Positions 26,331-61,968 of a stretch of 64,000 bases of DNA are shown in pieces. How positions within the stretch are numbered: the stretch's first letter is position 1; the number at the start of each line of letters is the position of its first letter. Below the pieces are notes generated by a model. That model saw only the letters and a program-made list of their open reading frames with translations. It was not told the origin of the DNA and searched no databases. The translations under genes were made by a program, and so were the position numbers. Location of the stretch: positions 124,001-188,000 of the IMG/VR virus record IMGVR_UViG_3300043399_000297, one strand, 5' to 3'.

Positions 26331-26359
26331 TTGACACGGCTACACTAAACTGCTAAAAG
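26331..26359 (+). promoter_or_regulatory. sigma70-type early promoter TTGACA-N17-TAAAAG
   Basis: Consensus -35; TGC immediately before the -10. Confidence 0.6.
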
Positions 26360-26397: not shown

Positions 26398-26874
26398 ATG
26401 ATGTTTAAGTATAAGTGCAATCCTGAGTTTTTTGATCATCAAGGGAACCCCTATTTCCCGGCATTTTTTAGAGGGAAGGAGCTGCCCGGATACTACTTTG
26501 TTTTCCGAGAGGGCAAGATAGTGTTTATGAGTAATCGCCGGGGATCACTTAAGCCGCTGTCACCTAGCGTTAGTGGTAAAAGCAAATACCCTAAGGTTAG
26601 TGTAACTGTTGATGAGTTTGGCACCAGACTCACTCCTCATATTCATCAAATTGTTGCACAGACTTTCCACGATTATCCTCTACCGGACGGGGTTACCGAA
26701 GCTGAATGGCGCCGAACTCCTGCTTCTATTAAGAAGCATTTTGATTCACATTATTGGGAAGCAAATCACATCGACCACGATCATTCTAACTTCCATCCAA
26801 ACAACTTGGAGTGGGTATCCCGCGGTACCAATGTCGATAAGTATCACGAACATCGCTTGGAAAATGAAGATTGA
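26398..26874 (+). CDS. HNH endonuclease-like protein
   Basis: IHQIVAQTF...ANHIDHDHSNFHPNNLEWVS..TN. Confidence 0.85.
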   Translation: MMFKYKCNPEFFDHQGNPYFPAFFRGKELPGYYFVFREGKIVFMSNRRGSLKPLSPSVSGKSKYPKVSVTVDEFGTRLTPHIHQIVAQTFHDYPLPDGVTEAEWRRTPASIKKHFDSHYWEANHIDHDHSNFHPNNLEWVSRGTNVDKYHEHRLENED

Positions 26875-28214: not shown

Positions 28215-29468
28215 ATGGCTCGTCGTGCAATCGTTACTAAGGTTCGCAAGCCCAAGAAGACCACAGTTCGTGTTGGTAAGAAGGGTGTTGCCCTCGCTTC
28301 GTCTGGTAATACACTTACGAAGGATTTTCGCCCTAAGGATAGTGATGTTCTGCGGTATGGTCCTGAACCCAGCTTCACTGACAGCCAGCCCATTGAGGAA
28401 CAGCGTCAGTCTATTCTTTCCGACGCATATAATTGGTATTCGCGTTTCTGCACTCACAAGGATTCCAAGCTGTTCCTAATTCAGTATCTTGAAGATACTA
28501 ATATGAGCAAGGATGTTGTCAAGTTAGTGCGTAAGGCCCCTGACAATCGTATGGTTACGACTGCTGGTTGGGCTGCTCGTTGCGCTACTCGTGGTCTTGT
28601 TCTGACCGAGAAGCAGAAGAATTATATTCAGGCTTGTGTTGATCGTCTAGTTGACTTTGCTAAGGCTGGTGTTAAGGACGAGCCTGCCGAAGGCGAAGAA
28701 ACTGTTGTTGAAAAGCCCAAGCGCACTGTCAACATTCAGGAAGTGATGCGTGAAAAGGCTGATGAAGCACTGAGTGATGTTGAAGCACTGTTTGATGAAT
28801 TCATCACTGCCGGTTGCCCCAAGGACTTTTCTGTAGACAAGAAGATCATTGGTTTTCTGACTAGCCGCAATGTTCTCCCCCAACACATTGCCAACGCTAT
28901 CAAGCGTTATACTAGCCTGCTTAACGAGTATAATGAAGCAGTTGCTGGTAACGATGACCAAGTCAAGGAAGCATATTCCAGCTATGGTAAGATGCAGTTG
29001 CGCTATACCGTCAAGTTTATTGAAGATATCATTGCAGAACTGAATGGTTATATCGGTCTTAAGCAGGCTACGAAGAAGGTTCGTGCTAAGAAGGTTGTTC
29101 CGGTTGAGAAGGTCGTGGCGAAGGTAAAGTTCCAAAAAACCAACGATGCACTTGGTATCACAAGTGTCAGTCCCGTCAAGCTGCATCAGTGCGCCGAGGC
29201 GTTCCTGTATGATACTGCTAAGCGCAAGATCATTTGGTTGGTTGCTGACGAGTATAGTAAGTGCTTGATTGTCAAGGGCAATGCAGTAATTGGGTTTGAC
29301 AAGAAAAAGAGTATGAGCAAGACTGTTAGGAAACCGGAAGAGTTCCTTAAGGGAATGATGAGCGCAAGTCGCCCGAACACTCGCAAGATGATTGACGATA
29401 TCAAGGCAGTTGCAGCGATCCCGAATGGTCGATTCAATGAGAATATTGTTATCCTTAAGGTTTGGTGA
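28215..29468 (+). CDS. hypothetical basic phage protein (417 aa)
   Basis: Strong SD, biased codon usage, C-terminal KTVRKPEE...NGRFNEN..ILK motif. Confidence 0.8.
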   Translation: MARRAIVTKVRKPKKTTVRVGKKGVALASSGNTLTKDFRPKDSDVLRYGPEPSFTDSQPIEEQRQSILSDAYNWYSRFCTHKDSKLFLIQYLEDTNMSKDVVKLVRKAPDNRMVTTAGWAARCATRGLVLTEKQKNYIQACVDRLVDFAKAGVKDEPAEGEETVVEKPKRTVNIQEVMREKADEALSDVEALFDEFITAGCPKDFSVDKKIIGFLTSRNVLPQHIANAIKRYTSLLNEYNEAVAGNDDQVKEAYSSYGKMQLRYTVKFIEDIIAELNGYIGLKQATKKVRAKKVVPVEKVVAKVKFQKTNDALGITSVSPVKLHQCAEAFLYDTAKRKIIWLVADEYSKCLIVKGNAVIGFDKKKSMSKTVRKPEEFLKGMMSASRPNTRKMIDDIKAVAAIPNGRFNENIVILKVW

Positions 29469-30072
29469 TCGTCTTGCACGAATCCCCGTGCCATCTGACG
29501 AAATTACCCTTGTTAACTGTCTTCCCGCAGTGTTCGCAAGTTAATTGATACTCTGGTTTGCACATTGGATTATTTTTCCCGGTCTTGTTAGCGTTTAGTG
29601 CCGACAGGGCCGGGTTTTTCTTCCCACGCATTGCACTCGGTTTCCCATACATTGGATTCTTCTCGCCTAAGTTTTCCGAGTTGCGTCTACTAAGTTCGGG
29701 GTTCTTGGTACCGAACATAGGATGTTTTTCTCCCTGGCGTTTTCTATTTCTCTCTGCTGTATCAGGGCGAGACTTCCCAAAACAAGGATGATTTACCCCT
29801 GCTTCGGAACCGCCTGTTTCCGGTATACGGTTGGCCCACTCATCGCTTTCTACAACGTTCCATAGTTCGGAATAATATACGCCCCAGGTTGTCAGTTCTT
29901 CTTTAGTTTGGCACTCTTTCAATATCACTGTAGTTACATCATTTCCGTGTTCAAGGATATGAGGTATCCAATCAATGCCGGAACCTTTATATTTGAATGG
30001 ATCTTTTTCTGTTTTACCTAGGTATTGTAGACCGGTTTTGTTGTGGGTCTTCTTATACAAATAAATAGTCAT
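29455..30072 (-). CDS. free-standing GIY-YIG-type (Seg-like) homing endonuclease with NUMOD3-like repeats and a C-terminal zinc knuckle
   Basis: IYLY...YLGKT..Y.GSG..W...WAN..PETG; NPMYGK/HPMFG repeats; CEHC...RWH...C. Confidence 0.8.
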   Translation of the reverse strand: MTIYLYKKTHNKTGLQYLGKTEKDPFKYKGSGIDWIPHILEHGNDVTTVILKECQTKEELTTWGVYYSELWNVVESDEWANRIPETGGSEAGVNHPCFGKSRPDTAERNRKRQGEKHPMFGTKNPELSRRNSENLGEKNPMYGKPSAMRGKKNPALSALNANKTGKNNPMCKPEYQLTCEHCGKTVNKGNFVRWHGDSCKTITKP

Positions 30073-30140
30073 TGCTGATACTCCGCTATAGTGTTAGAGT
30101 GGTTAGATGCGTCAACATCGTGAACCACACTTTTATTTAG
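30073..30140 (-). promoter_or_regulatory. late promoter plus conserved two-hairpin leader of an endonuclease gene, copy 1
   Basis: Homologous to 33040-33107 and 61575-61640, with compensatory base changes. Confidence 0.8.
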
Positions 30141-31746: not shown

Positions 31747-32397
31747 ATGACAAATAAAATTATCTCCATCTCCGGATTGATAGGATCAGGAAAAGACACC
31801 GCCGCCGACTATCTCTGCACGGTACATGGTTTCAAGCGTATGAGCTTTGGTGCCAGTCTCAAGGACGCAGTAGCAGTCATTTTTAATTGGAATCGCGAAC
31901 TACTAGAAGGGTCAACTAAGACTAGCCGAGAATGGCGAGAAGAAGTTGACACTTGGTGGGCAGATCGTTTAGGCATTCCCAATCTAACTCCTCGTTGGGT
32001 ACTACAGCAATGGGGAACAGAAGTTGCTCGTAAGGGTTTCCATGATGAAATCTGGGTTGCGAGTGTAGAGAACAAACTTCTCAACAATAAAGATGATATC
32101 GTAATCACTGATTGTAGATTCCCCAACGAACTTACTGCTATCAAGAACGCAGGTGGTATCACAATGCGAACTCATAGAGGCAAGGCTCCCAATTGGTTAG
32201 ATATCGCTGCAATTATAAACACTACTACGGACGAAGCCGTAAAGATTCACTGTCTAGAGCAAATTGAAAAGTTCAACGTTCATGCTAGCGAGTATTCTAG
32301 CGTTGGTCTAGCGTATGATTATCATCTAGACAACAATAAGACGGTAACAGAATTGCACGAACAAATTGAGAGTATTTTACGCCAATCTACAATTTGA
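31747..32397 (+). CDS. deoxynucleoside monophosphate kinase (T4 gp1-like)
   Basis: GLIGSGKDT P-loop, TPRWVLQQWGTE, ITDCRFPNE, HASE. Confidence 0.92.
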   Translation: MTNKIISISGLIGSGKDTAADYLCTVHGFKRMSFGASLKDAVAVIFNWNRELLEGSTKTSREWREEVDTWWADRLGIPNLTPRWVLQQWGTEVARKGFHDEIWVASVENKLLNNKDDIVITDCRFPNELTAIKNAGGITMRTHRGKAPNWLDIAAIINTTTDEAVKIHCLEQIEKFNVHASEYSSVGLAYDYHLDNNKTVTELHEQIESILRQSTI

Positions 32398-33039
32398 ATT
32401 ATGCCAACGATTGAAGTTGCCCATGCCCGCTACTTTCTTATGACAGTGCGGGCATTCAAATACCGGGTCCTTTTTACCATACCTAACACTCTTTTCACCC
32501 AATTGTGAATTTCTTCTTTTCTCGTTTGATTCGGGAGTTTGAGTTTTTCCAAACATATGGTTATCAGGGCCTAATTGACAGGTCTTCATCCTAGCACTTT
32601 GATCTGGTCTTTTTCTACCAGTGAGTTTTTTACTATGCTCGGGTCTTTTTCTACCTATTTTAGGTAAGGCAGCTTTTCTCTTGTGTTCTTCTGTGTGTTT
32701 TCTACCGGCTTGTGCAATTCTAAGTTTTTCTTTAGTTTTTGCTGATCTGGGAACGCCAACCTTCCCACCAACTCCCCCGCCGGTTTCTGGAATTTTATTA
32801 GCCCATTCTGTGCTGTCTGCAACACTCCATAGCTTGCTGTAATATCTGCCCCAGTAGTTTAATTCTTCGTTGGATTGGCATTCCTTGAGGATTTCAGTAG
32901 TTACATCACACCCGTGTTCTTTGATATGCGGTACCCAATCTGTACCAGAACCCATATACTTATACGGGTCTTGGATAGTTTTTCCGAGATACTTGAATCC
33001 GGTTTTGTTGTGGGTTTTCTTGTACAAATAAATAGTCAT
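32377..33039 (-). CDS. free-standing GIY-YIG-type (Seg-like) homing endonuclease with NUMOD3-like repeats and a zinc knuckle; paralogue of 29455-30072
   Basis: MTIYLYKKTHNKTG..YLGKT N-terminus nearly identical to copy 1; CPHC...RWH..C. Confidence 0.8.
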   Translation of the reverse strand: MTIYLYKKTHNKTGFKYLGKTIQDPYKYMGSGTDWVPHIKEHGCDVTTEILKECQSNEELNYWGRYYSKLWSVADSTEWANKIPETGGGVGGKVGVPRSAKTKEKLRIAQAGRKHTEEHKRKAALPKIGRKRPEHSKKLTGRKRPDQSARMKTCQLGPDNHMFGKTQTPESNEKRRNSQLGEKSVRYGKKDPVFECPHCHKKVAGMGNFNRWHNSNCRLA

Positions 33040-33107
33040 AGCTGATACTCCTTGACAGTATTAGAGTAGTTGGGGATTGCCGTCCCGCGAACTACATCTT
33101 TATTTAT
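33040..33107 (-). promoter_or_regulatory. late promoter plus conserved two-hairpin leader, copy 2
   Basis: See copy 1; the TAAATA overlaps the stop of the 33100-33456 gene. Confidence 0.8.
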
Positions 33108-44127: not shown

Positions 44128-47100
44128 ATGAGCCAACGCAATATAGATTTTGGTAGTTTTCCAAATGATCCCGGTGCAGATGCAATTAGAACCGCTTTTC
44201 AGAAAGTTCAAGAGAACTTTAGTGAGCTTTTCGCCGGTCAAGAACAGCAAGCTGTTCTTTCGGTAAACAAGACACCGGGTGCGGGAATTACAGTAAATGC
44301 TCCTACAGGAAATGTAGTAGTTAGTGCAAAAATTGCTTGTGTGCAGATACAAACCTCTACATTAGGTTTGGGTACCGGCGCTGGCCCTAATACTGCAAAC
44401 GTTGCTATTATTACTCAAGGTACAACCCCTTTCATTATTGACATTCCTGAAACAGTAAACAACGTAGCAAATATTAACTTAAGTAATACTTTAGTAACGA
44501 ATAATGTAGTAGCAAATGCTAACATAAGTGCTAATAATATTTCAGTTACGTCAAACATATCGTCCGGTAATATCTCTGCCACCAATCTTGCACTATCTGC
44601 AAATGCTAATGTTAGCAATGTAAATGCAGCAAACGGGACGTTTACTGCCAATGTAAGCGCAGTAAACTATAGTGGAACAACATTAGCCACAACCGGTAAT
44701 ATTACAACTAGTGCTGGGTTTTTAGTTGCACCAAATGCCAGTATTTCCGGAAACATTACATCAGGAAATGCTAATTTGGGTAATTTAGCTAAAGCTAATT
44801 ATTTCCAAGGTGATGGTAGTCTATTAACCAATGTTACTTCTGCTGCTAACTCACAGATAGTATTAGGTACAAGCAATGTAAAAATACCCACATCAGGTGG
44901 CAATGTTAATACTTCAGTTGGTGGTGTAGCTAATGTTTTGGTTGTAACAACAACCGGTGCAAATATAACAGGCACATTAAATGCAACCGGAAATAGTAAT
45001 GTTGGTAACTTAGGTACAAGTGGACTTATTACTGCTACTGGCAACATTACCGGTGGCAATTTAATCGGTACACTGGCAAATGGCAATAGTAACGTTTCTA
45101 TTCCAGCAGCAGCCGGCAATGTTAATATTTCAGTCAATGGAACAGCTAATGTTCTTGTCACTACTAGCACAGGAATCAATGTTGCTGGCACACTAAATGC
45201 AACTGGTAATAGTAATGTCGGTAACTTAGGTACAAGTGGACTTATTACGGCTACTGGAAATGTCACCGGCGGTAATATCAACACATCTGCTAAGGTTGTA
45301 GCATCAACATTAACATCAAACGTAGCAACAGGTACTGCTCCTTTAACAGTCACATCAACAACTCGTGTAGCTAACTTGAATGTTGCCTATGCAAACGTAA
45401 GTGATTTTGGAGCAGTTACTGCACAAACTACAGGAACATATTATCCAGTTTTTGTAAGTGGTAGTTCAAGTGCAAATTATGCTTTGGGCGCAAATAGCGT
45501 ATTCAGTGCTAACTTGGCAAACGGCGCATTGATTGCTACTACATTCGTCGGCGCATTGAGTGGCGCTGCAACAAGTGCAACTACAGCTGGTACAGTGACA
45601 ACAGCAGCGCAACCAAATATTACAAGTGTAGGCAATCTCACTTCATTGATTGTAATCGGTAATATTACAGGCGGTAATTTAATTGGTCCTCACGCGAACG
45701 GCACAAGCAATGTCAATATTCCAACTGCTAGTGGTAATGTTAACGTTTCGGTTGGTGCAACTCCCAATGTTCTTGTCATTACTTCAACCGGCATAAATGT
45801 TGCGGGCACATTAAACGCGACCGGCAATGCTAATGTCGGTAATATCGGTGCTACTAATGCAAACGTAACTGCGATCACGGCAACCGGCAATGCTAATGTC
45901 GGTAATATCGGTGCTACTAATGCAAACGTAACTGCGATCACAGCAACCGGCAATGCTAATGTCGGTAATATCGGTGCTACTAATGCCAACATAACTGCAA
46001 TCACCGTATCAGCTAATGCTAACGTAGGCAACTTAGGCACAACTGGACTTATTACTGCAACCGGAAACATTACAGGTGGCAATTTACTTGGTACTCACGC
46101 GAACGGCACAAGCAATGTCAATATTCCAACTGCAAATAGTAACATCAATCTTAGTGTTAATGGATCAGCAAATGTTCTAGTCGTGACTAGCACAGGCGTT
46201 AATGTTGCTGGTACATTTAATTCAAGTGGCAATGCTAACGTAGGCAACTTAGGCACAACTGGACTTATTACGGCTACTGGAAATATTACAGCGACCGGCA
46301 ATGTAAGCGGTGGTAATTTATTAACCTCAGCCGCAGTCATTGCAAGCACATTAACTTCCAATGTTGCAACTGGTACTGCTCCTTTAACAGTTACCTCAAC
46401 AACTCGCGTCAGCAATTTGAATGTTAATTACGCCAATGTAAGTGACTTCAATGTTGTAACTGCTCAATCTACAGGTACTTATTACCCGACATTTATTAAT
46501 GGAAGCTCAACTGCAAATTATGCATTAGCTGCTAATAGTGCGTTCAGTGCAAATCTTGCAAATGGTGCATTAACTGCTACGACATTTGTTGGGTCATTAA
46601 GCGGAGCTGCTACGAGCGCAACTACAGCCGGTACAGTGACCAATGCTGCTCAGGGCAATATAACCTCAGTCGGCACATTAACAAGTTTAAATGTAAGCGG
46701 AAACATCACCGCACCAAACATCACAGCTAATACAGGAATATTTGCAGGTAACGGGTCTGGATTAACTAATCTAACTGGTGCAAATGTGACAGGAACTGTG
46801 ACAAGCGCAACTAATGCTGCTGCTGTTCTACAAAACACTTCAAGTGCAACTACCGTTTACCCAACATTCAGCACATCAAGTGCAAATGGAAACTCAAGTG
46901 CAGTTATCAATACAGGAATCACCGCTAACTTAGCAAATGCAAGTATAACTGCTACAACATTTGTAGGTGCTCTATCAGGTGCTGCTACAACAGCAGGAAC
47001 TGTAACAACAGCATCACAACCAAACATTACAAGTGTTGGCAATTTGTCAAGCTTGACAGTAACAAGTAATATTACATCAGGTAATGCTAATCTCGGTAAC

Positions 47101-50100
47101 TTAGCTAAAGCTAATTATTTCCAAGGGGACGGCGGATTACTTTCTAATATCTCTGTAGCAGCCGGCTCATATATTCTCAATGGTACAAGTAACGTTACAG
47201 TTGATGCAAGTGGCAACGTAAGAACGAGCGTTGCAGGCAATGCTAATATATTCATCGTTACAGGCGCCGGCGCCAATGTTAACGGAACATTCACTGTAAC
47301 TGGAAACGCTAATGTTGGTAATCTAAACGGCGCCAATACTATTGCAGGTAATTATCTAACAGGAACATTAACTACTGCATCGCAACCTAATATCACTAGT
47401 GTAGGAAACTTGACTTCATTAACGATGGCAGGTATTGCTAATCTAGGTCCTAACGGTAATGTAATTATTACGGGTGGAACGAATGGCGCATTCTTAAAGA
47501 CGAATGGATCTGGATCATTATCTTGGGATACTGCAACATTAGTTCCTGCGCAAGGTTTGAATACACAAGTTATCTTCAACGACGGCGGATCAACTTATGC
47601 AGGTAATGCTAATCTAACGTTCAACAAGACTACCGGTAATTTAAGTGTAGGCGGTGGATTAACTGTAACAGGCACTTCTACATTTGGAAACGTGTATGCT
47701 AATTCAGGCACAATAGGTGCTTCGTTATTGACCGGTACATTAACTACAGCAGCACAACCTAATATCACGAGCATAGGAGCATTAAGTTCATTAATCGTTA
47801 ATGGTAATATTAATGCTAGTAGTTTAACATTAAGCAACTATGCTAATGCTAAGTTTTTAACAGCTACTGCTGGAACATTAACCGCTAGCACTCCTGCCAT
47901 AAGTGTAACCCAAACTTGGAATAATGCGAGTGTCGCATTTACGGCGATAACAGCGAATATAACTGACACCGCTAGTGCAGCGGGTTCTGAGTTAATTGAC
48001 TTGCAGGTAGCTGGTGTGACTGAATTCGCAGTAGACAAATCAGGAAACGGAACATTTGCCGGAACTCTTACTGTAACAGGAAATGCTAATGTTGGTAACT
48101 TAGGTACTGCTGGTCTTATTACTGCAAGTGGTAATATTACAGGCGGCAATTTAAATACATCAGGCAATGTTACTGCATCAAGATTAATTTCAAATGTTGC
48201 AACAGGCACTGCACCATTTGTTGTCACTTCTACTACGCAGGTAGCAAATCTCAGTGTTGCGACAGCAGGTTCTGCTACCACAGCAGGTTCTGCTACCACA
48301 GCAGGAACGGTAACAACTAATGCTCAACCTAATATTACTAGCGTTGGTACATTAACATCACTCGGAGTAAGTGGAAATATCACGGCTGCAAATATTACTG
48401 CAAACACAGGAATCTTTGCCGGAAATGGATTTGGACTAACTAATTTGACTGGTGCTAATGTAACCGGAACAGTTAGCAGTGCAACGAATGCTGCTGCATT
48501 ATTACAGAACACGAGTGCAGCAACTACCGTTTACCCAACATTCAGCACATCAAGTGCAAATGGAAACTCAAGTGCAGTTATCAATACAGGAATCACCGCT
48601 AACTTAGCAAATGCAAGTATAACTGCTACAACATTTGTAGGTGCTCTATCAGGTGCTGCTACAACAGCAGGAACTGTAACAACTGCTGCACAAGGCAATA
48701 TAACCTCAGTCGGAACTTTAACTTCACTTAATGTTAGTGGTAATATCACTGCTCCCAATATTACTGCTAACACCGGCATATTCGCAGGTAACGGATTTGG
48801 ACTTACAAATATTGCAGGCGGTAATGTTACTGGTCAGGTTGGTAACGCATTAGTTGCCGGCACAGTATATACGGCAGCACAACCCAATATTACAAGTGTC
48901 GGCACCTTGTCTAGCTTGAGCGTAACTGGAAACACGACTAGTGGTAATTTAATAGGTACATTAGCAAATGGTAATAGTAATATTGCTATCACTTCGAATG
49001 CGAACATCACATTCTATGTAGCAGGTAATGCTACAGCGAGAGCAGTGTTCACGACAACCGGTGCAAACATTAATGGTACTGCTAACATAACAGGAAATGC
49101 TAATGTCGGTAATTTGGGTGCTGCACAAGTATTTGCAACCGCAAATATTACAGCTCCGCAGATTATTTCAAATATTGCTACTGGTACTGCTCCATTCGTC
49201 GTAACTTCTACTACCCAAGTAGCAAACCTAAGCGTTGCTACCGCAGCTAGTGCAACTACTGCTGGTACAGTTACAACTAATAATCAGCCAAACATTACAG
49301 GTGTCGGTACATTAACTAACCTTTCTGTAGCTGGAAATATAACAGCCGGCAATGCAAATGTAACCGGACAGTTAATATCTACCCTAGCTACTGGCAATGC
49401 TCCTATTCTAGTAAGTTCTACCACTAAAGTGGCCAATCTCAATGCTGATTTATTAGATGGTTATGATACCGCTACTGCAAACACCGCGAACACGGTCGCA
49501 ATAAGAGATGCAAATGGCAACGTTTCTGCTAATTTCTTTGTCGGTAACGGTAGTCAACTAACAGGTATCATTACAAGCGTATCTAATGTAACAAACGGAA
49601 CGTCTAATCTCAATATTGCAACGTCCGGCGGTAATGTTACGGTTAGTGTTGCGGGTAATGCTAATGTAGTTACAGTAACTGGTACCGGTGTTAATGTCTC
49701 CGGCACGTTAAATACAACAGGTAATGTTTCGTTTACTGGTGCAAATGTAAGTGTAGGAAATGTCTCAAATCTTAAGATTACCGGCGGAACTGCAAATGCA
49801 TTGTTGCAGACTGATGGTACAGGTAATCTGAGTTGGACTACTCCAACTACTGCATATGTATATACTCAATCTGTTGCTGCTACAAGTTGGGTAATAACTC
49901 ACAACTTAGGTATTCAGTATGTTAATGTTCAACTCGTAGATGCAACAGGAAATAGTTGGACTGGTAGATATAACTATCCAACTATCACATTTAATAATAC
50001 AAGTGCATTAACTGTAACTTTCGATAGCGCACAAGCTGGATATGCCGCTGTAACTTCAGGCGGGGGATCACAGGGTCCTCAGGGCCTTCCGGGAGCATCA

Positions 50101-51498
50101 GGCGGCGGATCAATATCAAATGGATTATCAAATGTAACCATTGCTACCTCCGGCGGTAACGTTACTACATCAGTCGGCGGCGTTGCAAATATAATTGTTG
50201 CTACAACGACAGGGGTTAATGTCTCTGGAACATTGAACGCAACTGGAAATGCTAACTTCGGTAATGTGGGTGCTACAATAGGATCATTCACTAATGTAAG
50301 TGGAAACGGTTCTACTTTATCTTCTATTACCGGCGGAAATGTCACTGGACAGGTAGGAAACGCATTAGTTGCAGGAACCGTTTATGCTGCTTCTCAGGGC
50401 AATATAACCTCAGTCGGCACATTAACTTCACTCGGTGTGAGTGGAAATATCACTGCTCCTAATATTACTGCAAACACAGGAATCTTTGCAGGTAATGGCT
50501 CCGGTCTTACAAGTATTACAGGTGGTAATGTAATTGGTGCAGTTGCCAACGCCACTTACGCCACGAGTGCAGGCTTAGCAACTAGTGCAACAACGGCCGG
50601 AACTGTAACAACTGCTTCTCAGGGCAATATAACCTCAGTCGGCACATTAACTTCACTTGGCGTGAGTGGCAATATCACTGCTCCTAATATTACTGCTAAT
50701 ACCGGCATCTTTGCAGGTAATGGCTCCGGACTTACAAGTATTACAGGTGGTAATGTAACAGGTTGGGTAGCAAATGCTAACGTGGCAAACTACACAGTTG
50801 CTGCTGCCACATCTACTGGTACATATTATCTCTCACTTTCATCTGCTACATCAGGTAACATTGCCTTAGCAGCTAATACTAATATTAACGTAGCGGTTGC
50901 AACCGGTGCTCTTAATGCTGCTTTACTAGGCGGTGTTCTTACTACAGCATCACAGCCAAACATCACTAGTGTTGGTACGTTAACAAGTCTCTCAGTAACT
51001 GGTAATATAACTACTGGTAATTTAATTGGTACATTAACAAACGGAAATAGTAATATATCTATACCTTCTGCTAATGGAAATATTAATATTAGTTCTGGTG
51101 GTAATGCTAATATATTAATTGTAACTGGCACGAGTGTAAATGTAACAGGAACATTGAATGCTACCGGTGCAATAATTTCCGGAACTGCCAATGTTACGAG
51201 TAACGCAAATATTACACCCACTACTTCAGTCAATCAATATAATGTGACTGCGTTAGCTGTGGCAGCAAATATCCTTGCACCAACTGGTACTGCGTTCGAT
51301 GGACAAAAACTATTAATACGACTTAAAGACAATGGGGTGGGTAGAGCATTGACTTGGACTACAACATCAGGTGGTTATAGAGTCATAGGAACAACATTGC
51401 CAACTACAACCACAGCTTCTAAAACTACATATGTAGGATGTGTGTATAATTCCGCAGATACTTTCTGGGATGTAGTAGCTGTGACAACACAGGCTTAA
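44128..51498 (+). CDS. long tail fibre / adhesin-like virion protein (2456 aa)
   Basis: N-terminal G..PND..AD.IRTAFQKV.ENF.EL anchor; many QPNITSVG.L and GNANVGNLG repeats. Confidence 0.85.
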   Translation: MSQRNIDFGSFPNDPGADAIRTAFQKVQENFSELFAGQEQQAVLSVNKTPGAGITVNAPTGNVVVSAKIACVQIQTSTLGLGTGAGPNTANVAIITQGTTPFIIDIPETVNNVANINLSNTLVTNNVVANANISANNISVTSNISSGNISATNLALSANANVSNVNAANGTFTANVSAVNYSGTTLATTGNITTSAGFLVAPNASISGNITSGNANLGNLAKANYFQGDGSLLTNVTSAANSQIVLGTSNVKIPTSGGNVNTSVGGVANVLVVTTTGANITGTLNATGNSNVGNLGTSGLITATGNITGGNLIGTLANGNSNVSIPAAAGNVNISVNGTANVLVTTSTGINVAGTLNATGNSNVGNLGTSGLITATGNVTGGNINTSAKVVASTLTSNVATGTAPLTVTSTTRVANLNVAYANVSDFGAVTAQTTGTYYPVFVSGSSSANYALGANSVFSANLANGALIATTFVGALSGAATSATTAGTVTTAAQPNITSVGNLTSLIVIGNITGGNLIGPHANGTSNVNIPTASGNVNVSVGATPNVLVITSTGINVAGTLNATGNANVGNIGATNANVTAITATGNANVGNIGATNANVTAITATGNANVGNIGATNANITAITVSANANVGNLGTTGLITATGNITGGNLLGTHANGTSNVNIPTANSNINLSVNGSANVLVVTSTGVNVAGTFNSSGNANVGNLGTTGLITATGNITATGNVSGGNLLTSAAVIASTLTSNVATGTAPLTVTSTTRVSNLNVNYANVSDFNVVTAQSTGTYYPTFINGSSTANYALAANSAFSANLANGALTATTFVGSLSGAATSATTAGTVTNAAQGNITSVGTLTSLNVSGNITAPNITANTGIFAGNGSGLTNLTGANVTGTVTSATNAAAVLQNTSSATTVYPTFSTSSANGNSSAVINTGITANLANASITATTFVGALSGAATTAGTVTTASQPNITSVGNLSSLTVTSNITSGNANLGNLAKANYFQGDGGLLSNISVAAGSYILNGTSNVTVDASGNVRTSVAGNANIFIVTGAGANVNGTFTVTGNANVGNLNGANTIAGNYLTGTLTTASQPNITSVGNLTSLTMAGIANLGPNGNVIITGGTNGAFLKTNGSGSLSWDTATLVPAQGLNTQVIFNDGGSTYAGNANLTFNKTTGNLSVGGGLTVTGTSTFGNVYANSGTIGASLLTGTLTTAAQPNITSIGALSSLIVNGNINASSLTLSNYANAKFLTATAGTLTASTPAISVTQTWNNASVAFTAITANITDTASAAGSELIDLQVAGVTEFAVDKSGNGTFAGTLTVTGNANVGNLGTAGLITASGNITGGNLNTSGNVTASRLISNVATGTAPFVVTSTTQVANLSVATAGSATTAGSATTAGTVTTNAQPNITSVGTLTSLGVSGNITAANITANTGIFAGNGFGLTNLTGANVTGTVSSATNAAALLQNTSAATTVYPTFSTSSANGNSSAVINTGITANLANASITATTFVGALSGAATTAGTVTTAAQGNITSVGTLTSLNVSGNITAPNITANTGIFAGNGFGLTNIAGGNVTGQVGNALVAGTVYTAAQPNITSVGTLSSLSVTGNTTSGNLIGTLANGNSNIAITSNANITFYVAGNATARAVFTTTGANINGTANITGNANVGNLGAAQVFATANITAPQIISNIATGTAPFVVTSTTQVANLSVATAASATTAGTVTTNNQPNITGVGTLTNLSVAGNITAGNANVTGQLISTLATGNAPILVSSTTKVANLNADLLDGYDTATANTANTVAIRDANGNVSANFFVGNGSQLTGIITSVSNVTNGTSNLNIATSGGNVTVSVAGNANVVTVTGTGVNVSGTLNTTGNVSFTGANVSVGNVSNLKITGGTANALLQTDGTGNLSWTTPTTAYVYTQSVAATSWVITHNLGIQYVNVQLVDATGNSWTGRYNYPTITFNNTSALTVTFDSAQAGYAAVTSGGGSQGPQGLPGASGGGSISNGLSNVTIATSGGNVTTSVGGVANIIVATTTGVNVSGTLNATGNANFGNVGATIGSFTNVSGNGSTLSSITGGNVTGQVGNALVAGTVYAASQGNITSVGTLTSLGVSGNITAPNITANTGIFAGNGSGLTSITGGNVIGAVANATYATSAGLATSATTAGTVTTASQGNITSVGTLTSLGVSGNITAPNITANTGIFAGNGSGLTSITGGNVTGWVANANVANYTVAAATSTGTYYLSLSSATSGNIALAANTNINVAVATGALNAALLGGVLTTASQPNITSVGTLTSLSVTGNITTGNLIGTLTNGNSNISIPSANGNINISSGGNANILIVTGTSVNVTGTLNATGAIISGTANVTSNANITPTTSVNQYNVTALAVAANILAPTGTAFDGQKLLIRLKDNGVGRALTWTTTSGGYRVIGTTLPTTTTASKTTYVGCVYNSADTFWDVVAVTTQA
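45818..46005 (+). repeat. three tandem 63-bp repeats (ATGNANVGNIGATNAN(V/I)TAIT)
   Basis: Near-identical DNA units with period 63. Confidence 0.85.
46846..47009 (+). repeat. ~164-bp direct repeat, second copy at 48520-48683
   Basis: Identical by eye; offset 1674 bp (in frame). Confidence 0.85.
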
Positions 51499-51507
51499 GG
51501 ACAAAAG

Positions 51508-52491
51508 ATGGCAACTAAAACTGTTCTAGTCACTTCCGGTACTACTTGGACACTTCCTAGCGATCTTGACACGTCAGTCAACGTCACTGTCGTTTGTATT
51601 GGTGGTGGTGGTGGTGGCGCTAGAAGTGGCGGCAGTGCTGGGGGTGGTGGGGGCGGTGGGGGCGCTTGGTCAAAAGTATCGCTTTCTATGGCCGGCCTTG
51701 CTCCTGGAAGTTCATCAGTTTTTATTAATATTGGCAGTGCTGGTTCTGGTGGTATTTCTGGATCAGCTAGTGGTGGTAGTGGTGGCGATACTTGGCTGAA
51801 TAAAACAGCTAATATTGCTCCTACTACTTCTAGTGATGGCGCTTTAGCCAAAGGCGGCGGGGGCGGGTTTTCCGGCGGAAACGGTAATAGCGGTGGTTCA
51901 GCAGCAACTGGAGTTGGAGATACAAAAAATTCTGGTGGCGCCGGAGGCGCTGGTTTCTGGGGTGGCGGTGGTGGTGGCGCCGCCGGAAACGAAACTGGCA
52001 ATGGCGGAACTGGTGGTACTTCTGCAACTGGTGGTGTTCGAGGTGGCGGCGGAGGCGGCGGTACAGGAAGCGCAGGTACTACTACGTCTAGCGGCAATGG
52101 TGGTAATGGCGGATTAACATATCTAGGTGCAGCTGGAGGTACTGGTGGTTCATCTGGCACTCCTGCAGGGGGAGTAGGTTCAAATGGCGGCGGCGGTGGT
52201 GGCGGCTACTCTGTTACTAGTGGTACTGGAGGCAGCGGCGGCGCTGGAGGTAATGGTACTGAATATACCATCACCGCAGGAGGCACTGCAGGGTCAGGTG
52301 GTGGCGGCGGCGGCGGGGGTTATGGCACTACTGCTAATTATATAGGCGGGTCTGCTGGTAATTATGGCGGCGGCGGTGGCGGCGGCGGATATAGTACTGG
52401 TAATGGCGGAAATGGCGCGCAAGGTGCATTGATCATAACTTACACTGTTGCTGTACCTAGCACAGGCAATATGCTTATGATGTTCTTTTAA
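51508..52491 (+). CDS. glycine-rich virion (fibre-associated) protein
   Basis: TSGTTWTLP...V.VVCIGGGGGG...GAQGALIITY architecture. Confidence 0.75.
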   Translation: MATKTVLVTSGTTWTLPSDLDTSVNVTVVCIGGGGGGARSGGSAGGGGGGGGAWSKVSLSMAGLAPGSSSVFINIGSAGSGGISGSASGGSGGDTWLNKTANIAPTTSSDGALAKGGGGGFSGGNGNSGGSAATGVGDTKNSGGAGGAGFWGGGGGGAAGNETGNGGTGGTSATGGVRGGGGGGGTGSAGTTTSSGNGGNGGLTYLGAAGGTGGSSGTPAGGVGSNGGGGGGGYSVTSGTGGSGGAGGNGTEYTITAGGTAGSGGGGGGGGYGTTANYIGGSAGNYGGGGGGGGYSTGNGGNGAQGALIITYTVAVPSTGNMLMMFF

Positions 52492-59990: not shown

Positions 59991-60914
59991 GTGAAGAATC
60001 GGTTGTGGGTTGAGAAATATCGCCCATCTAAAATAGATGATTATGTGTTTGTTGACGATAGACAAAAGAACACAGTTGAGCAGTGGATCAAAGACGAGTC
60101 TATTCCCCATCTATTGCTTTCAGGCGATCCCGGCACAGGTAAAACTACATTAGCTAAGGTTCTTATCAATGAACTTAATGTAGAAGACTTTGACGTTCTA
60201 GAAATCAATGCTAGTAGAGAAAATGGCATTGACAACCTTAGAGAAAAAATCAATGGCTTTGTGCAGACTATGCCTTTCGGCAAGTTCAAGGTTGTTTTGT
60301 TAGACGAAGCTGACTATCTTACTCAGCCAGCACAGGCAGCATTGCGTAATGATATGGAAGCATATCACGAAACAGTCAGATACATTTTAACTTGTAACTA
60401 TCAGCACAAAATTATTCCTGCGTTGAAAAGTCGTTGTCACGAATTCCATATCGCAAAGCCCGATATCACGGAATACACAACTCGTGCCGCTACTGTTCTT
60501 ATAAACGAAAACATTGAGTTTGATCTAGATGACCTTGACACATATGTTCGTGCCTGTTATCCCGATCTAAGAAAGTGTTTGAATCAGTTACAGCAGAATA
60601 GCATCACTGGTTCTCTTGCCAAGCCACAGTCAACTGGTAGTGGCGAAGATGAACTATTGGTCGCTGCTACAGAATTGTTCAAGAGTGGTAAGATTCTTGA
60701 AGGTCGTCAGCAATTGTTACAATATATCAGTCTATATCCAACTCGGGTAGAAGATGTGGTAAGATGGGCATATGACAATCTTGATCTTTGGGGTAAGACT
60801 CAAGAGAGCAAAGATGCTTCAATTGTGATCATTCGCAATACGTTAGCAAACCTGCCCTTAGTAGGGATACCTGAAATAAGCATTGCGGCCATGATGGTTG
60901 AATTATGTAGCTAA
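59991..60914 (+). CDS. clamp-loader large subunit (T4 gp44 / RFC-like AAA+)
   Basis: [30 protein letters not shown]. Confidence 0.95.
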
Positions 60915-61574
60915 TTCCCAACCCTTGACTGATTTGTAATATTTTGTGCGGTTGACCAAATTATAAATATTACTGGCTGAGGCACTGATGTAATTACAGA
61001 AATCGTATTTTGTCATGGTAACTACTTCTTGAGTTTCTTTGTTTCTAAATGAATATAAAGTGTGATCATATTGGTGGTTACCGGCACCTGTTCTATTTCT
61101 ACTTCTAGTCGCTCGTACTTCCGGAGAACTCATACGCTTCTTAAACGCCTCACGACTTTTTTGGCTTTTTGCAGGGTGTCTTTCACCCAAAGACAGCATT
61201 CTCTCGGATTGCAGTGTTCGGTATTTTTCTAATTTGTTGTGACTGTTCTCGCCTGATATTCTTAGAATATGCTCTTCGGTATGCTTATATCCGCTACATC
61301 CGTCTCCACCGTCGGTGAGATTTCGTAGTATGCCGGTGTCATTATCTACTCTACCGTACCATCGTATCATCCGTCTTTCTAACGCAAACGCTCCGGTTTC
61401 GGTGAGATTTTGTTCAAGAAATACAATTCTTGAAAGGTCATCTGGAACCTTAAGTTTTCCGTGATTAGCAAACGCTCGGTTCCCGTTGCCTTTTCCTATG
61501 TAATAAGGGGTTCCTGCTTTAGCTGTAGTTGAGTCATTTTTTCGTAGATATGCGTAGACATAATAAATATTCAT
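60903..61574 (-). CDS. free-standing GIY-YIG-type homing endonuclease (different clade from the other two)
   Basis: YYVYAYLR...PYYIGKG.GNRA...E...I..YGR...[10 protein letters not shown]; helical repeats; KGW C-terminal DNA-binding motif. Confidence 0.8.
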
Positions 61575-61640
61575 GCTGATTCTCCTTAACAGAATTAGAG
61601 TGAGTAGGAATGCCAGTTCCGTGACTCACAACTATTTATA
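61575..61640 (-). promoter_or_regulatory. late promoter (TATAAATA) plus conserved two-hairpin leader, copy 3
   Basis: See copy 1. Confidence 0.8.
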
Positions 61641-61653
61641 CTAGGAGGTTATT

Positions 61654-61968
61654 ATCCGTTACTTATTGATTAGTTTCCTCAGAAAGATGGGTGGACAGAT
61701 TGACGAAATGGTCAGTGTTGGCAAAAGAGTTCGTGATAGTGATAAGATCAATGCTAATGTCATTCTTGACTTTGCTGATAAAAAGATTATTAAGTGTATC
61801 ATTGAGGGCAATGAACACGACTCTACCTTTGAGCAACTAAGAGATTATTATTATAAGGTCTATCCTAACTTAATTGATCAGTTAGAGCGTGAGGCTAATA
61901 TTACTGCAATGCAAGAGCAGCCAATGAATAGACAGCAGCGTAGAGCGCAAGAAAGTAAAAAGAAGTAA
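61654..61968 (+). CDS. hypothetical protein; start either a non-canonical ATC at 61654 or TTG at 61666
   Basis: AGGAGG SD at 61643-61648; in-frame stop at 61642-61644. Confidence 0.65.
   Translation: MRYLLISFLRKMGGQIDEMVSVGKRVRDSDKINANVILDFADKKIIKCIIEGNEHDSTFEQLRDYYYKVYPNLIDQLEREANITAMQEQPMNRQQRRAQESKKK

What the first reader, a model, noticed from the sequence alone, without database searches (positions are those of the whole stretch)
60903..61640. The same leader is attached to a different endonuclease clade
Seen: copies 1 and 2 precede close paralogues (MTIYLYKKTHNKTG...; zinc-knuckle tail). Copy 3 precedes a dissimilar protein ([11 protein letters not shown]...PYYIGKG; KGW tail). The HNH gene at 26398 has no such leader and uses a sigma70 promoter. 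Inference: the leader is older than, or moves independently of, the ORF it controls. That would point to a shared trans-acting factor acting on all such selfish genes rather than sequence-specific autoregulation.
Basis: partly seen in the sequence, partly recalled or inferred. Interest (0 to 1): 0.6.

Follow-up and report, generated by a model that had tools for sequence, protein, structure and literature searches.

The report
Antisense RNA module heading phage homing-endonuclease genes
The shared "leader" in front of unrelated selfish nuclease genes in this freshwater jumbo phage is a portable control module about 85 bp long with two face-to-face late promoters, and its conserved structure folds on the opposite strand, pointing to an undescribed small antisense RNA that could restrain all these genes together.

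Summary
The same module of about 85 nt precedes copies 1 and 2 (SegE-like GIY-YIG) and copy 3 (a different GIY-YIG clade). It occurs 7 times in the 244-kb phage record, also before HNH genes, and in more than 200 IMG/VR loci before at least six nuclease-domain families.

The module belongs to the inserted cassette: an empty site lacks it. At one shared site, two phages carry the same module with different ORFs, and homology breaks at codon 4. The leader tree and ORF family are nearly uncoupled.

The module begins with ATAAATA, this phage's late-promoter box, which also sits upstream of tail tube and adaptor genes.

The new point is that the conserved structure lies on the antisense strand. Wobble pairs, an 8-bp hairpin built from the "invariant" blocks, and folding energies all favour that strand (177 of 191 modules).

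A second ATAAATA box, encoded by HEG codons 3-4 in any reading frame, sits 5 nt before that structure. The structure ends in a hairpin plus U-run.

Best reading: a cis-antisense RNA of about 65-70 nt covering the HEG Shine-Dalgarno site, like IS10 RNA-OUT. No RNA data exist, so transcription and repression are inferred.

The parts
60903..61574 (-). Copy 3 homing-endonuclease ORF (223 aa), GIY-YIG clade F0. Its first 12 nt (ATG AAT ATT TAT) belong to the conserved module.
   Evidence: ORF and translation. PHROG 15526 at E 2e-24. The family profile hits GIY-YIG structures 9u75 (E 6.5e-4) and UvrC. Absent from the empty site in relative L231.
61633..61640 (-). Sense late-promoter box TATAAATA, which should drive the HEG mRNA. 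On the + strand it is the U-rich tail of the predicted antisense-RNA terminator.
   Evidence: Sequence. About 40 of the 52 + strand ATAAATA boxes in the record lie in intergenic DNA just upstream of an ORF start, including tail tube, head-tail adaptor and virion protein genes. The box is present in 100 of 107 modules, 3-5 nt before the hairpin in 80 of 88.
61575..61632 (-). HEG 5' untranslated region: hairpin P1/P2 (61629-61600), CUCUAAU, Shine-Dalgarno GGAG (61585-61582), AUCAGC.
   Evidence: Alignments A1-A3. The 14 sense-strand pairs are 96.2% paired, against 72.7% after shuffling.
61563..61569 (+). Antisense late-promoter box ATAAATA, the reverse complement of HEG codon 2 third base plus codons 3-4. 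It faces the sense box across about 65 bp.
   Evidence: TATTTA follows the ATG in 93 of 107 modules, in three reading frames. Its distance to CAGC is fixed at 5 nt in 123 of 180 while the ATG floats. TATTTAT is purged from 227 other ORFs, 9 observed against 62.5 +/- 6.9 expected.
61575..61640 (+). Predicted antisense RNA of copy 3, about 66 nt. It has a 5' hairpin P3' (61576-61598: 8 bp, 7-nt loop CCUUAAC carrying the anti-Shine-Dalgarno bases), a hairpin P1'/P2' (61600-61629), and a U-rich tail (61630-61640).
   Evidence: The + strand folds at -19.1 kcal/mol (z -3.1); the - strand folds at -13.8 (z -1.1). The 19-pair antisense structure is 98.4% paired in 150 modules. Transcription has not been shown.
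29455..30072 (-). Copy 1 HEG ORF (205 aa): SegE-like GIY-YIG clade F1, NUMOD3 repeats, C-terminal zinc-knuckle tail.
30061..30140 (.). Copy 1 module. Antisense box 30061-30067 (+), predicted antisense RNA about 30073-30140 (+), sense box CTAAATA 30134-30140 (-), P1/P2 30099-30128.
   Evidence: Fold energy is -16.9 on the + strand and -13.9 on the - strand.
32377..33039 (-). Copy 2 HEG ORF (220 aa), a paralogue of copy 1 (45% identity).
   Evidence: PHROG 314 homing endonuclease, E 3e-16.
33028..33107 (.). Copy 2 module. Antisense box 33028-33034 (+), predicted antisense RNA about 33040-33107 (+), sense box ATAAATA 33101-33107 (-), P1/P2 33066-33095.
   Evidence: Fold energy is -19.4 on the + strand and -15.9 on the - strand. 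Relative L075 has the same flank and module but an HNH ORF.
26398..26874 (+). HNH endonuclease gene without the module (the comparison case).
   Evidence: Pfam HNH_3 and PHROG 959. No covariance-model hit.

Best explanation
The "leader" is a portable control module of about 85 bp that forms the 5' end of free-standing homing-endonuclease (HEG) cassettes. It occurs in an abundant lineage of freshwater jumbo phages whose closest cultured relatives are PA5oct-like and which use a T4-type ATAAATA late promoter.

The module holds two face-to-face late-promoter boxes.
- The outer box starts the HEG mRNA at or near the base of a hairpin, giving a 5' UTR of about 62 nt with a GGAG Shine-Dalgarno site.
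- The inner box is written on the other strand by HEG codons 3-4. That is why proteins of all families start M-x-I-Y.
- The inner box is predicted to start, 5 nt further on at GCUG, a small antisense RNA of about 65-70 nt.

The predicted antisense RNA has three parts:
- an 8-9 bp hairpin whose 7-nt loop carries the complement of the Shine-Dalgarno site;
- a second, bulged hairpin;
- a U-run, which is the complement of the outer promoter box and acts with the second hairpin as an intrinsic terminator.

The antisense RNA is complementary to the whole HEG 5' UTR. It would therefore limit HEG translation and/or mRNA life. Because the modules of different cassettes are alike, it could act across copies, like IS10 RNA-OUT multicopy inhibition.

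Status of each step:
- Shown from sequence: sharing across ORF families, cassette membership, promoter identity of the box, and selection for antisense-strand folding.
- Inferred: that the inner box fires, that the RNA ends at the U-run, and that it represses.
For: **Shared and independent of the ORF**
- 7 copies in the genome, before two GIY-YIG clades and HNH genes.
- More than 200 IMG/VR loci, before families that Pfam recognises as HNH, GIY-YIG/SegE and TnsA-like.
- 71 family changes on the leader tree, against 85.8 +/- 3.1 for shuffled labels and a minimum of 5.
- ORF swap behind the same module, with the homology break at +12.
- The empty site lacks both module and ORF.

**The box is the late promoter**
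- About 40 of 52 + strand boxes sit in intergenic DNA just upstream of ORF starts, including tail tube and adaptor genes.
- The motif is purged from other ORFs on both strands: 3 observed against 35.9 expected, and 9 against 62.5.

**Antisense-strand structure**
- Non-Watson-Crick cells are mostly A.C, which is G.U on the other strand: 48 against 13, and 22 against 4.
- One pair reads GC 70, AU 13, AC 24, GU 0, with the A.C cells spread over 21 stem haplotypes.
- The invariant CTCTAAY and ATCAGC blocks pair only on the antisense strand. They give an 8-9 bp hairpin in 98 of 104 modules that were collected without reference to those blocks. Its energy is -6.8 against -2.8 kcal/mol, and the antisense fold is better in 102 of 104.
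- RNAalifold gives -20.7 for antisense against -12.6 for sense.
- The 19-pair antisense structure is 98.4% paired, with 383 compensatory cells against 83 after shuffling.
- The same holds in cassettes co-oriented with host genes (25 of 27) and anti-oriented (56 of 58).

**Promoter geometry**
- TATTTA is kept in three reading frames.
- The spacing box-N5-GCUG is fixed while the ATG floats.

**Terminator**
- The U count after the antisense stem averages 6.5 of 10, and it stays at 4-8 in the 10 modules that lack the sense box.

**Cross-talk is feasible**
- Cross-copy duplexes among the six reliably placed copies are -46 to -97 kcal/mol.
- Related genomes hold 1-13 copies.
Against: - No transcript evidence. 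Only DNA runs of one freshwater sample hold the sequence. Start, end and even existence of the antisense RNA are predictions.
- No gp55-like sigma was found with Sigma70_r2 in this 71%-complete record, so late-promoter use rests on motif position alone.
- In copy 3 the U-run is poor (AACUAUUUAUAC).
- The U-run and the sense promoter are the same bases, so their conservation cannot be apportioned between the two roles.
- Watson-Crick pairs fold on both strands, so a sense-strand role for P1/P2, such as a 5' stabiliser, is not excluded.
- Sequences are related, so shuffle controls overstate significance.
- Two module copies on one contig (L099) keep TATTTAT but have another sequence in place of the sense box.
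Confidence: 0.55

Rival explanations
1. A sense-strand leader only, working like T4 I-TevI or Aeh1 mobE. A late promoter is followed by a structured 5' UTR. The hairpin stabilises the 5' end of the late mRNA. In longer read-through transcripts the ATAAATA box pairs with UAUUUAU just after the AUG and hides the start region, so the nuclease is made only late.
For: - The late box sits directly upstream of every copy.
- The predicted start falls at the base of P1, since the spacer is 3-5 nt.
- ATAAATA and TATTTAT are exact complements, and they pair in the MFE of 56 of 185 long transcripts. Pairing probability over AUG to +13 is 0.53 in long transcripts against 0.42 in late ones.
- This mechanism is documented for T4-type HEGs (PMC2988022, PMC3014915). 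Hairpins with TATAAATA were seen upstream of metagenomic HEGs (PMC2677866).
Against: - Shine-Dalgarno pairing probability is the same in long and late transcripts, 0.55 against 0.55, and the long-range stem is absent from the MFE in 70% of modules.
- About two thirds of cassettes, and all 7 in this genome, lie antisense to their neighbours, so there is little read-through to silence.
- It does not explain the excess of A.C over G.U, or the 8-bp hairpin that exists only on the antisense strand.
Confidence: 0.15
2. A PeSL-like composite promoter/terminator that insulates the cassette and serves as a recombination point. The hairpin plus U-run stops any transcription leaving the cassette on the antisense strand. 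The repeated 85-bp module provides homology for swapping ORFs. There is no regulatory antisense RNA.
For: - The antisense hairpin is followed by a U-run.
- An ORF swap has its breakpoint at the module edge.
- The copy-3 site is hyperplastic in relatives, which carry different small ORFs there.
- Zinc-knuckle tails are shared by GIY-YIG and HNH families.
- PeSL motifs are known to mediate modular shuffling in T4-like phages (PMC2839356, PMC4122927).
Against: - A bare terminator needs neither the 5' hairpin P3', with its anti-Shine-Dalgarno loop, nor a promoter box held at a fixed 5-nt distance in front of it.
- The genome removes ATAAATA from both strands of other ORFs but keeps it in all 7 HEGs.
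- Recombination homology alone does not select for compensatory base changes.
Confidence: 0.2
3. One reading: a dedicated trans-acting protein, such as a translational repressor or RNase, recognises the conserved hairpin and single-stranded blocks of the sense leader on all HEG mRNAs.
For: - Nearly invariant bases (CRC bulge, CUCUAA, CAGC) sit beside freely covarying stems.
- The module is shared by unrelated ORFs, so the nucleases themselves are unlikely regulators.
Against: - The "invariant single-stranded" blocks are explained as a base-paired helix on the other strand.
- No RegA or RegB homologue was found in the record, though the record is only 71% complete.
- No candidate protein was identified.
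Confidence: 0.1

Closest known systems
IS10/Tn10 RNA-IN / RNA-OUT antisense control, and IS200 art200
   Same: - A selfish gene's 5' end carries two face-to-face promoters.
- The inner one makes an antisense RNA of about 70 nt with a stable stem-loop, complementary to the translation-initiation region.
- The RNA acts in trans, so repression rises with copy number (PMC5006887).
- In IS200 the sRNA is encoded opposite the tnpA 5' UTR (PMC4513863).
   Different: - No sequence or structural homology.
- The target here is a homing endonuclease in a lytic phage, not a transposase.
- Both promoters are phage late boxes.
- The predicted RNA covers the Shine-Dalgarno site and the whole UTR but probably not the AUG.
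- Its terminator U-run doubles as the sense promoter.
- Nothing here has been shown experimentally.
T4-type control of homing endonucleases by a late promoter plus an RBS-sequestering hairpin (I-TevI, I-TevII, I-TevIII, segB, Aeh1 mobE)
   Same: A late TATAAATA promoter lies directly upstream of the HEG and a conserved RNA structure sits at the initiation region. Unrelated nuclease families (GIY-YIG and HNH) share the same regulatory logic (PMC2988022, PMC3014915).
   Different: - In T4 the hairpin is a sense-strand structure that buries the RBS in read-through transcripts, and the promoter lies inside its 5' arm.
- Here the RBS is no more buried in long transcripts than in late ones.
- Most cassettes here are antisense to their neighbours.
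- The structure here is selected on the other strand.
Hairpins with TATAAATA upstream of free-standing GIY-YIG and Vsr-like HEGs in GOS metagenomes (Dassa et al. 2009, PMC2677866)
   Same: Metagenomic phage HEG cassettes, some from fresh water, of different nuclease families carry a conserved 5' hairpin with a late-promoter box and two mutually complementary motifs. A solitary hairpin remains where the HEG was lost.
   Different: Their sequences are not held here, so identity with this module could not be tested. They interpreted the hairpins as sense-strand translational attenuators. An antisense RNA, an inner promoter and extension of the module into codons 2-4 were not described.
CfrI antisense RNA of cyanophage S-PM2
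   Same: An antisense RNA in a T4-like phage that runs opposite a homing-endonuclease gene, with a presumed regulatory role (PMC2984593).
   Different: CfrI is about 225 nt and links the HEG with psbA. It is a single locus, not a multicopy module heading many HEG families. There was no Rfam match between the two.
PeSL composite promoter/terminator motifs of T4-like phages
   Same: Short, repeated promoter-plus-stem-loop motifs at gene-cassette borders in hyperplastic regions. They act as exchange points between unrelated sequences (PMC2839356, PMC4122927).
   Different: PeSLs combine an early promoter with a terminator and are not tied to HEGs. The module here uses late boxes on both strands, reaches into the ORF, and contains a Shine-Dalgarno / anti-Shine-Dalgarno hairpin.

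Membership tests
cis-encoded antisense RNA control (IS10 RNA-OUT type) | A promoter on the opposite strand inside the 5' end of the target gene, facing the target's promoter | tested here: met
   By sequence only. An ATAAATA box lies at +12..+6 on the other strand in 93 of 107 modules and in three reading frames, with fixed 5-nt spacing to GCUG. The motif is otherwise purged from ORFs. Promoter activity was not measured.
cis-encoded antisense RNA control (IS10 RNA-OUT type) | A discrete small transcript with its own conserved secondary structure and terminator | tested here: met
   Structure: 19 pairs, 98.4% paired, 16 with compensatory changes. The wobble asymmetry favours the antisense strand. 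A hairpin plus U-run is present. Transcript ends are predicted, not observed.
cis-encoded antisense RNA control (IS10 RNA-OUT type) | Complementarity to the translation-initiation region of the target mRNA | tested here: met
   The predicted RNA is the exact complement of the 5' UTR from -1 to the mRNA start. The loop of P3' carries CCU, the complement of the Shine-Dalgarno site, in 81 of 104 modules. The AUG itself is probably not covered.
cis-encoded antisense RNA control (IS10 RNA-OUT type) | The antisense RNA is made and lowers target expression, in trans as well | not testable with these tools
   No RNA run holds the sequence. Only duplex energies between copies could be computed.
T4-type late-promoter plus RBS-sequestering hairpin (I-TevI / mobE) | A late promoter TATAAATA directly upstream of the HEG | tested here: met
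   The box is present in 100 of 107 modules. The same motif precedes structural genes in this genome.
T4-type late-promoter plus RBS-sequestering hairpin (I-TevI / mobE) | A stable sense-strand structure that buries the Shine-Dalgarno site and AUG in read-through transcripts but not in late transcripts | tested here: not met
   Shine-Dalgarno pairing probability is 0.55 in both transcript types. The box:UAUUUAU stem is in the MFE of only 56 of 185.
T4-type late-promoter plus RBS-sequestering hairpin (I-TevI / mobE) | The HEG is embedded in, and co-oriented with, an upstream early or middle transcription unit | tested here: not met
   All 7 copies are on the minority strand of the genome. In other contigs, 63 cassettes are anti-oriented and 33 co-oriented.
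Any Rfam 15 family | A covariance-model match on either strand | tested here: not met
   cmscan at E<=1 over six copies with flanks gave only one chance-level hit elsewhere in L003.
GIY-YIG homing endonucleases (copy 3 ORF) | A GIY...YIG catalytic domain recognisable by profile | tested here: met
   The F0 family profile hits GIY-YIG domain structures 9u75 (E 6.5e-4) and UvrC 1ycz (E 0.04). The single protein has no Pfam hit.
GIY-YIG homing endonucleases (copies 1 and 2 ORFs) | A GIY...YIG catalytic domain recognisable by profile | tested here: inconclusive
   7 of 30 family members match SegE_GIY-YIG (best E 5e-4) and 4 match GIY-YIG (0.014). There is no PDB hit. NUMOD3 and PHROG homing-endonuclease hits are present.

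The most novel reading that the evidence does not exclude
The module encodes a previously undescribed family of phage small RNAs. These form a common, copy-number-sensing brake on many unrelated homing endonucleases at once. Antisense RNAs from any cassette, or from a co-infecting relative, would pair with the leaders of the others, so the total HEG load of a jumbo phage (1-13 cassettes) is regulated as one network. The module's rigid overlapping code (promoter = codons 3-4; terminator U-run = the other promoter) would also make it the unit that recombines new nuclease domains onto an already tamed expression platform.
Probability: 0.35. Interest if true: 0.8.

Novelty: new variant of a known kind. 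Interest (0 to 1): 0.7.

Why it matters
Homing endonucleases are the main selfish elements of large lytic phages. How phages tolerate many of them is known only from a few T4-type cases, where a sense-strand hairpin and late promoter act together.

A conserved small antisense RNA gene built into the 5' end of the cassettes would add a second, transposon-like mode of control. It would explain why unrelated nucleases share one "leader" and the odd M-x-I-Y N-terminus.

The module is abundant: more than 200 loci were recovered under capped scans, with up to 13 copies per genome. It is compact and easy to test with reporters. It could also serve as a marker for HEG cassettes in metagenomes, and as an example of extreme overlapping coding in which promoter, terminator, codons and RNA structure share the same bases.

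Tried and rejected
- **Rfam.** No family matched on either strand.
- **Cultured phages.** No match to the region by megablast or to the module by blastn in INPHARED. The module seems confined to uncultured relatives.
- **RNA evidence.** Only two DNA runs of one freshwater sample hold the locus.
- **M-x-I-Y as a protein-level feature.** Rejected. The same TATTTA(T) occurs in three frames (MxIY, MIFI, MYL), and conservation stops at +12.
- **TATTTAT as an outward promoter for the neighbouring host gene.** Not favoured. It is equally conserved in co-oriented and anti-oriented cassettes, and a hairpin plus U-run lies between it and the neighbour.
- **Antisense hairpin as a terminator of host read-through only.** Not favoured. 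The antisense folding advantage is the same where host genes run the other way.
- **Pseudoknot between the P2 loop and AUCAGC, and extended pairing with the 16S 3' end.** Checked by eye on the copies. Neither is conserved.
- **K-turn reading of the CRC bulge.** The 3' strand lacks the G.A pairs.
- **RegA, RegB and Sigma70_r2 searches in the record.** All negative. These say little, because the record is 71% complete and gp55-like sigmas are divergent.
- **Single-linkage clustering of whole ORFs.** It merged families through shared NUMOD3 repeats and tails. It was replaced by clustering of residues 5-95.
- **Supplement of Dassa et al. 2009.** Not held, so identity of their motifs with this module stays open.
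- **Coordinate of the seventh genomic copy.** It was mis-set. Its row there should be ignored.
Full report
**What is at the coordinates**

The window is part of a 244,022-bp IMG/VR virus record. It has 38.8% G+C, is about 71% complete, and comes from a freshwater metagenome. Its clamp loader is 51% identical to that of PA5oct-like jumbo Pseudomonas phages. IMG/VR holds at least 285 relatives.

At 60903-61574 (-) lies a 223-aa [14 protein letters not shown]...PYYIGKG. Directly upstream on the same strand are:
- TATAAATA (61640-61633);
- a 3-nt spacer;
- a bulged hairpin (61629-61600);
- CUCUAAU, GGAG, AUCAGC, and the ATG.

The same arrangement precedes 29455-30072 (-) and 32377-33039 (-). The proteins of copies 1 and 2 are 45% identical. 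Neither resembles the copy-3 protein by BLASTP or by profile comparison.

Copy 3's family is nevertheless GIY-YIG: its profile hits 9u75 and UvrC. The family of copies 1 and 2 is weakly SegE-like GIY-YIG. So within the window the leader spans two clades of one superfamily.

**How far the sharing goes**

A covariance model built from 107 non-redundant modules finds seven copies in the record and nothing else at E<=1. All seven are on the minority strand. The four copies outside the window precede three HNH endonucleases and one frameshifted GIY-YIG remnant. The HNH genes carry the same zinc-knuckle tail as copies 1 and 2. The HNH gene at 26398 has no copy.

Two capped IMG/VR scans were run. One was anchored on the 3' block and one on the hairpin only.

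The ORFs behind the module fall into at least six N-terminal domain families:
- two GIY-YIG clades;
- a PYTYLIGW family;
- classical GIY-YIG;
- two HNH types.

Pfam adds TnsA-like nucleases among the rarer ORFs. Related genomes carry 1 to 13 copies.

**Is the leader tied to its ORF?**

On a maximum-likelihood tree of 150 leaders, ORF family changes 71 times. The minimum is 5, and shuffled labels give 85.8 +/- 3.1, with 0 of 1000 shuffles reaching 71. There is a trace of co-descent, but the two are largely uncoupled. The tree rests on 84 nt and is poorly resolved, which inflates the count.

Pairwise figures agree. Among leader pairs that are 90-95% identical, only half share the ORF family.

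Two direct cases support this.
- **ORF swap.** Contig L075 is syntenic with the window around copy 2 and has the same upstream flank and module. Homology ends 12 nt into the ORF. An HNH gene like genomic copy 6 follows instead of the GIY-YIG gene, and flank homology resumes after the stop.
- **Empty site.** Relative L231 has only about 70 nt between the clamp loader and the next gene. There, neither the ORF nor the module is present. The module is therefore part of the inserted cassette (about 60906-61650), not of the host locus.

**The box is this phage's late promoter**

Of the 52 ATAAATA boxes on the + strand, about 40 lie in intergenic DNA, most of them 5-30 nt upstream of an ORF start. 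These include genes for tail tube, head-tail adaptor and a virion protein.

In 227 non-HEG ORFs the motif is strongly purged on both strands:
- coding strand: 3 observed against 35.9 +/- 5.7 in codon shuffles;
- opposite strand: 9 observed against 62.5 +/- 6.9.

From established knowledge of T4, gp55-dependent late promoters consist of TATAAATA about 6 nt before the start. The spacer between the box and the first G of the hairpin is 3-5 nt in 80 of 88 modules. The HEG mRNA should therefore begin at the hairpin base.

**The module runs into the ORF**

Conservation continues to +12 and then stops. Proteins of all families start M-x-I-Y. The same TATTTA(T) is also found one or two bases earlier, giving MIFI or MYL. 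The distance from CAGC to TATTTA stays at 5 nt (123 of 180; 4-6 nt in 173) while the ATG shifts inside it.

The constraint is therefore on nucleotides, not on amino acids. TATTTAT is the reverse complement of the late box.

**The structure belongs to the other strand**

On the sense strand a 14-pair structure is well supported. It is 96.2% paired against 72.7% after shuffling, with slid controls at 32-46%. It was confirmed on the second, independently anchored set.

The exceptions to Watson-Crick pairing, however, are lopsided.
- A.C or C.A cells outnumber G.U or U.G cells by 48 to 13, and by 22 to 4 in the second set.
- One pair reads GC 70, AU 13, AC 24, GU 0, with the A.C cells on 21 different stem haplotypes.
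- A.C on one strand is G.U on the other.

The nearly invariant "single-stranded" blocks CUCUAAY and AUCAGC turn out to pair with each other on the antisense strand through G.U pairs. This extends the 3-bp sense helix to an 8-9 bp hairpin with a 7-nt loop.
- In 104 modules collected without reference to these blocks, the antisense fold is this hairpin in 98.
- Its energy is -6.8 against -2.8 kcal/mol for the sense fold, and it is the better fold in 102 of 104.
- The loop carries CCU, the complement of the Shine-Dalgarno site, in 81.

RNAalifold gives -20.7 (antisense) against -12.6 (sense).

On 150 modules aligned in antisense orientation, a 19-pair structure is 98.4% paired. Shuffles give 83.6% and slid controls 32-50%. 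There are 383 compensatory cells against 83 after shuffling, and one G.U pair is conserved in 148 of 150.

The three window copies fold better as + strand RNA:

| Copy | + strand (kcal/mol) | - strand (kcal/mol) |
|---|---|---|
| 3 | -19.1 | -13.8 |
| 1 | -16.9 | -13.9 |
| 2 | -19.4 | -15.9 |

The advantage is the same whether the cassette runs with its neighbours (25 of 27) or against them (56 of 58). It is therefore not a by-product of host read-through.

**Model**

Reading the + strand at copy 3 gives, in order:
- ATAAATA (61563-61569);
- 5 nt;
- GCUG..., opening hairpin P3' (61576-61598);
- one base;
- hairpin P1'/P2' (61600-61629);
- a U-rich tail, which is the complement of the sense promoter.

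This is the anatomy of a small RNA gene with its own late promoter and an intrinsic terminator, lying face to face with the HEG promoter. Its product would be complementary to the whole HEG 5' UTR, including the Shine-Dalgarno site.

The nearest functional analogues are the following:
- IS10 RNA-OUT, a 69-nt RNA that acts in trans and underlies multicopy inhibition (PMC5006887);
- IS200 art200 (PMC4513863);
- CfrI, an antisense RNA opposite a HEG in cyanophage S-PM2 (PMC2984593).

Cross-copy duplexes among the six reliably placed copies in this genome are -46 to -97 kcal/mol, against about -130 for cognate pairs. Action across cassettes is therefore thermodynamically feasible.

**What is shown and what is inferred**

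Shown from sequence:
- the module exists and is shared;
- it is part of the cassette;
- it is independent of the ORF;
- its box is the genome's late-promoter motif;
- its structure is selected on the antisense strand;
- the inner box sits at a fixed distance from that structure.

Inferred:
- the inner box fires;
- the RNA ends at the U-run;
- it represses the HEG.

No RNA data exist for this phage. No gp55-type sigma, RegA or RegB was detected in the incomplete record.

**Rivals**

Three rivals are set out under Rival explanations:
- a purely sense-strand T4-like leader;
- a PeSL-like promoter/terminator insulator and recombination point (PMC4122927);
- a dedicated RNA-binding protein.

The sense-only model fails on Shine-Dalgarno accessibility, cassette orientation and the wobble asymmetry. 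The insulator model does not explain P3' or the fixed inner promoter. Recombination at the module is nevertheless likely to be real and is compatible with the main model.

**Known or new**

Control of phage HEGs by a late promoter and an RNA structure is established (PMC2988022). Conserved hairpins with TATAAATA upstream of metagenomic GIY-YIG and Vsr-like HEGs were reported in 2009 (PMC2677866). I could not compare those sequences with this module.

I found no description of any of the following, either in Rfam or in the searchable literature:
- an antisense small RNA built into HEG cassettes;
- an inner promoter encoded by codons 3-4;
- this RNA family.

I therefore rate it a new variant of a known kind, that is, cis-antisense control of a selfish gene, resting on computational evidence only.

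Noticed in passing
G000:C1:207852-208017 (outside the window; identical in L071): The fourth module copy heads a broken GIY-YIG gene. The ORF stops after 30 aa, and a 205-aa frame continues on the same strand. Intact modules before ORFs of 4-37 aa also occur in L018, L037, L048, L065, L069 and L075. Modules therefore outlive their nucleases.
   Followed up: partly
window 60915-61690, compared with L229, L233, L249 and L231: The gap between the clamp loader and the next gene is a hot spot. Relatives carry unrelated small + strand ORFs there (139, 153 and 96 aa) or nothing (about 70 nt in L231).
   Followed up: partly
window 61666-61968 (+): The listed TTG start is probably wrong. By homology with L231 (MNGQIDELV...), the gene starts at the ATG at 61687.
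   Followed up: partly
window 60962-60969 (+): A further TATAAATA lies on the + strand inside the 3' end of the copy-3 HEG, about 50 nt after the clamp-loader stop. It could start a long transcript antisense to the whole HEG.
   Followed up: no
whole record G000: ATAAATA is purged about 7- to 12-fold from both strands of ordinary ORFs. This implies the late-promoter box is active in either orientation and is selected against inside genes.
   Followed up: yes
window 29455-29560 and 32377-32470 (-), and genomic HNH copies at G000:C1:197748, 233076 and 64649: The C-terminal zinc-knuckle tail (C..C...NF.RWH...C) is shared by GIY-YIG and both HNH families. Nuclease domains and DNA-binding tails are shuffled independently, behind the same module.
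   Followed up: partly
G000:C1:198401 and 65257 (+): Two long + strand ORFs (475 and 488 aa) have their first possible start codon inside the antisense of a module (the ATG in GCTGATG). Their real starts were not checked. If they are real, the host gene's 5' end overlaps the predicted small RNA.
   Followed up: no
L099:2824-2926 and L099:4335-4437: Two modules on one contig have TGACAACAA in place of the sense ATAAATA box but keep TATTTAT, the hairpins and an A-rich run. This may reflect a phage with a different late motif, or cassettes without their own mRNA promoter.
   Followed up: no
window 26331-26359 (+): Upstream of the module-less HNH gene is TTGACA-N17-TAAAAG. The -35 is perfect and the -10 weak, and the consensus scan did not report it.
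   Followed up: partly
window 44128-51498 (+) and 51508-52491 (+): There is a 2456-aa ORF full of 60-300-nt internal repeats shared with 17320-20751, apparently fibre-like, and a Gly-rich ORF with GGTGGY repeats. Late boxes precede 17320 and 44128.
   Followed up: no
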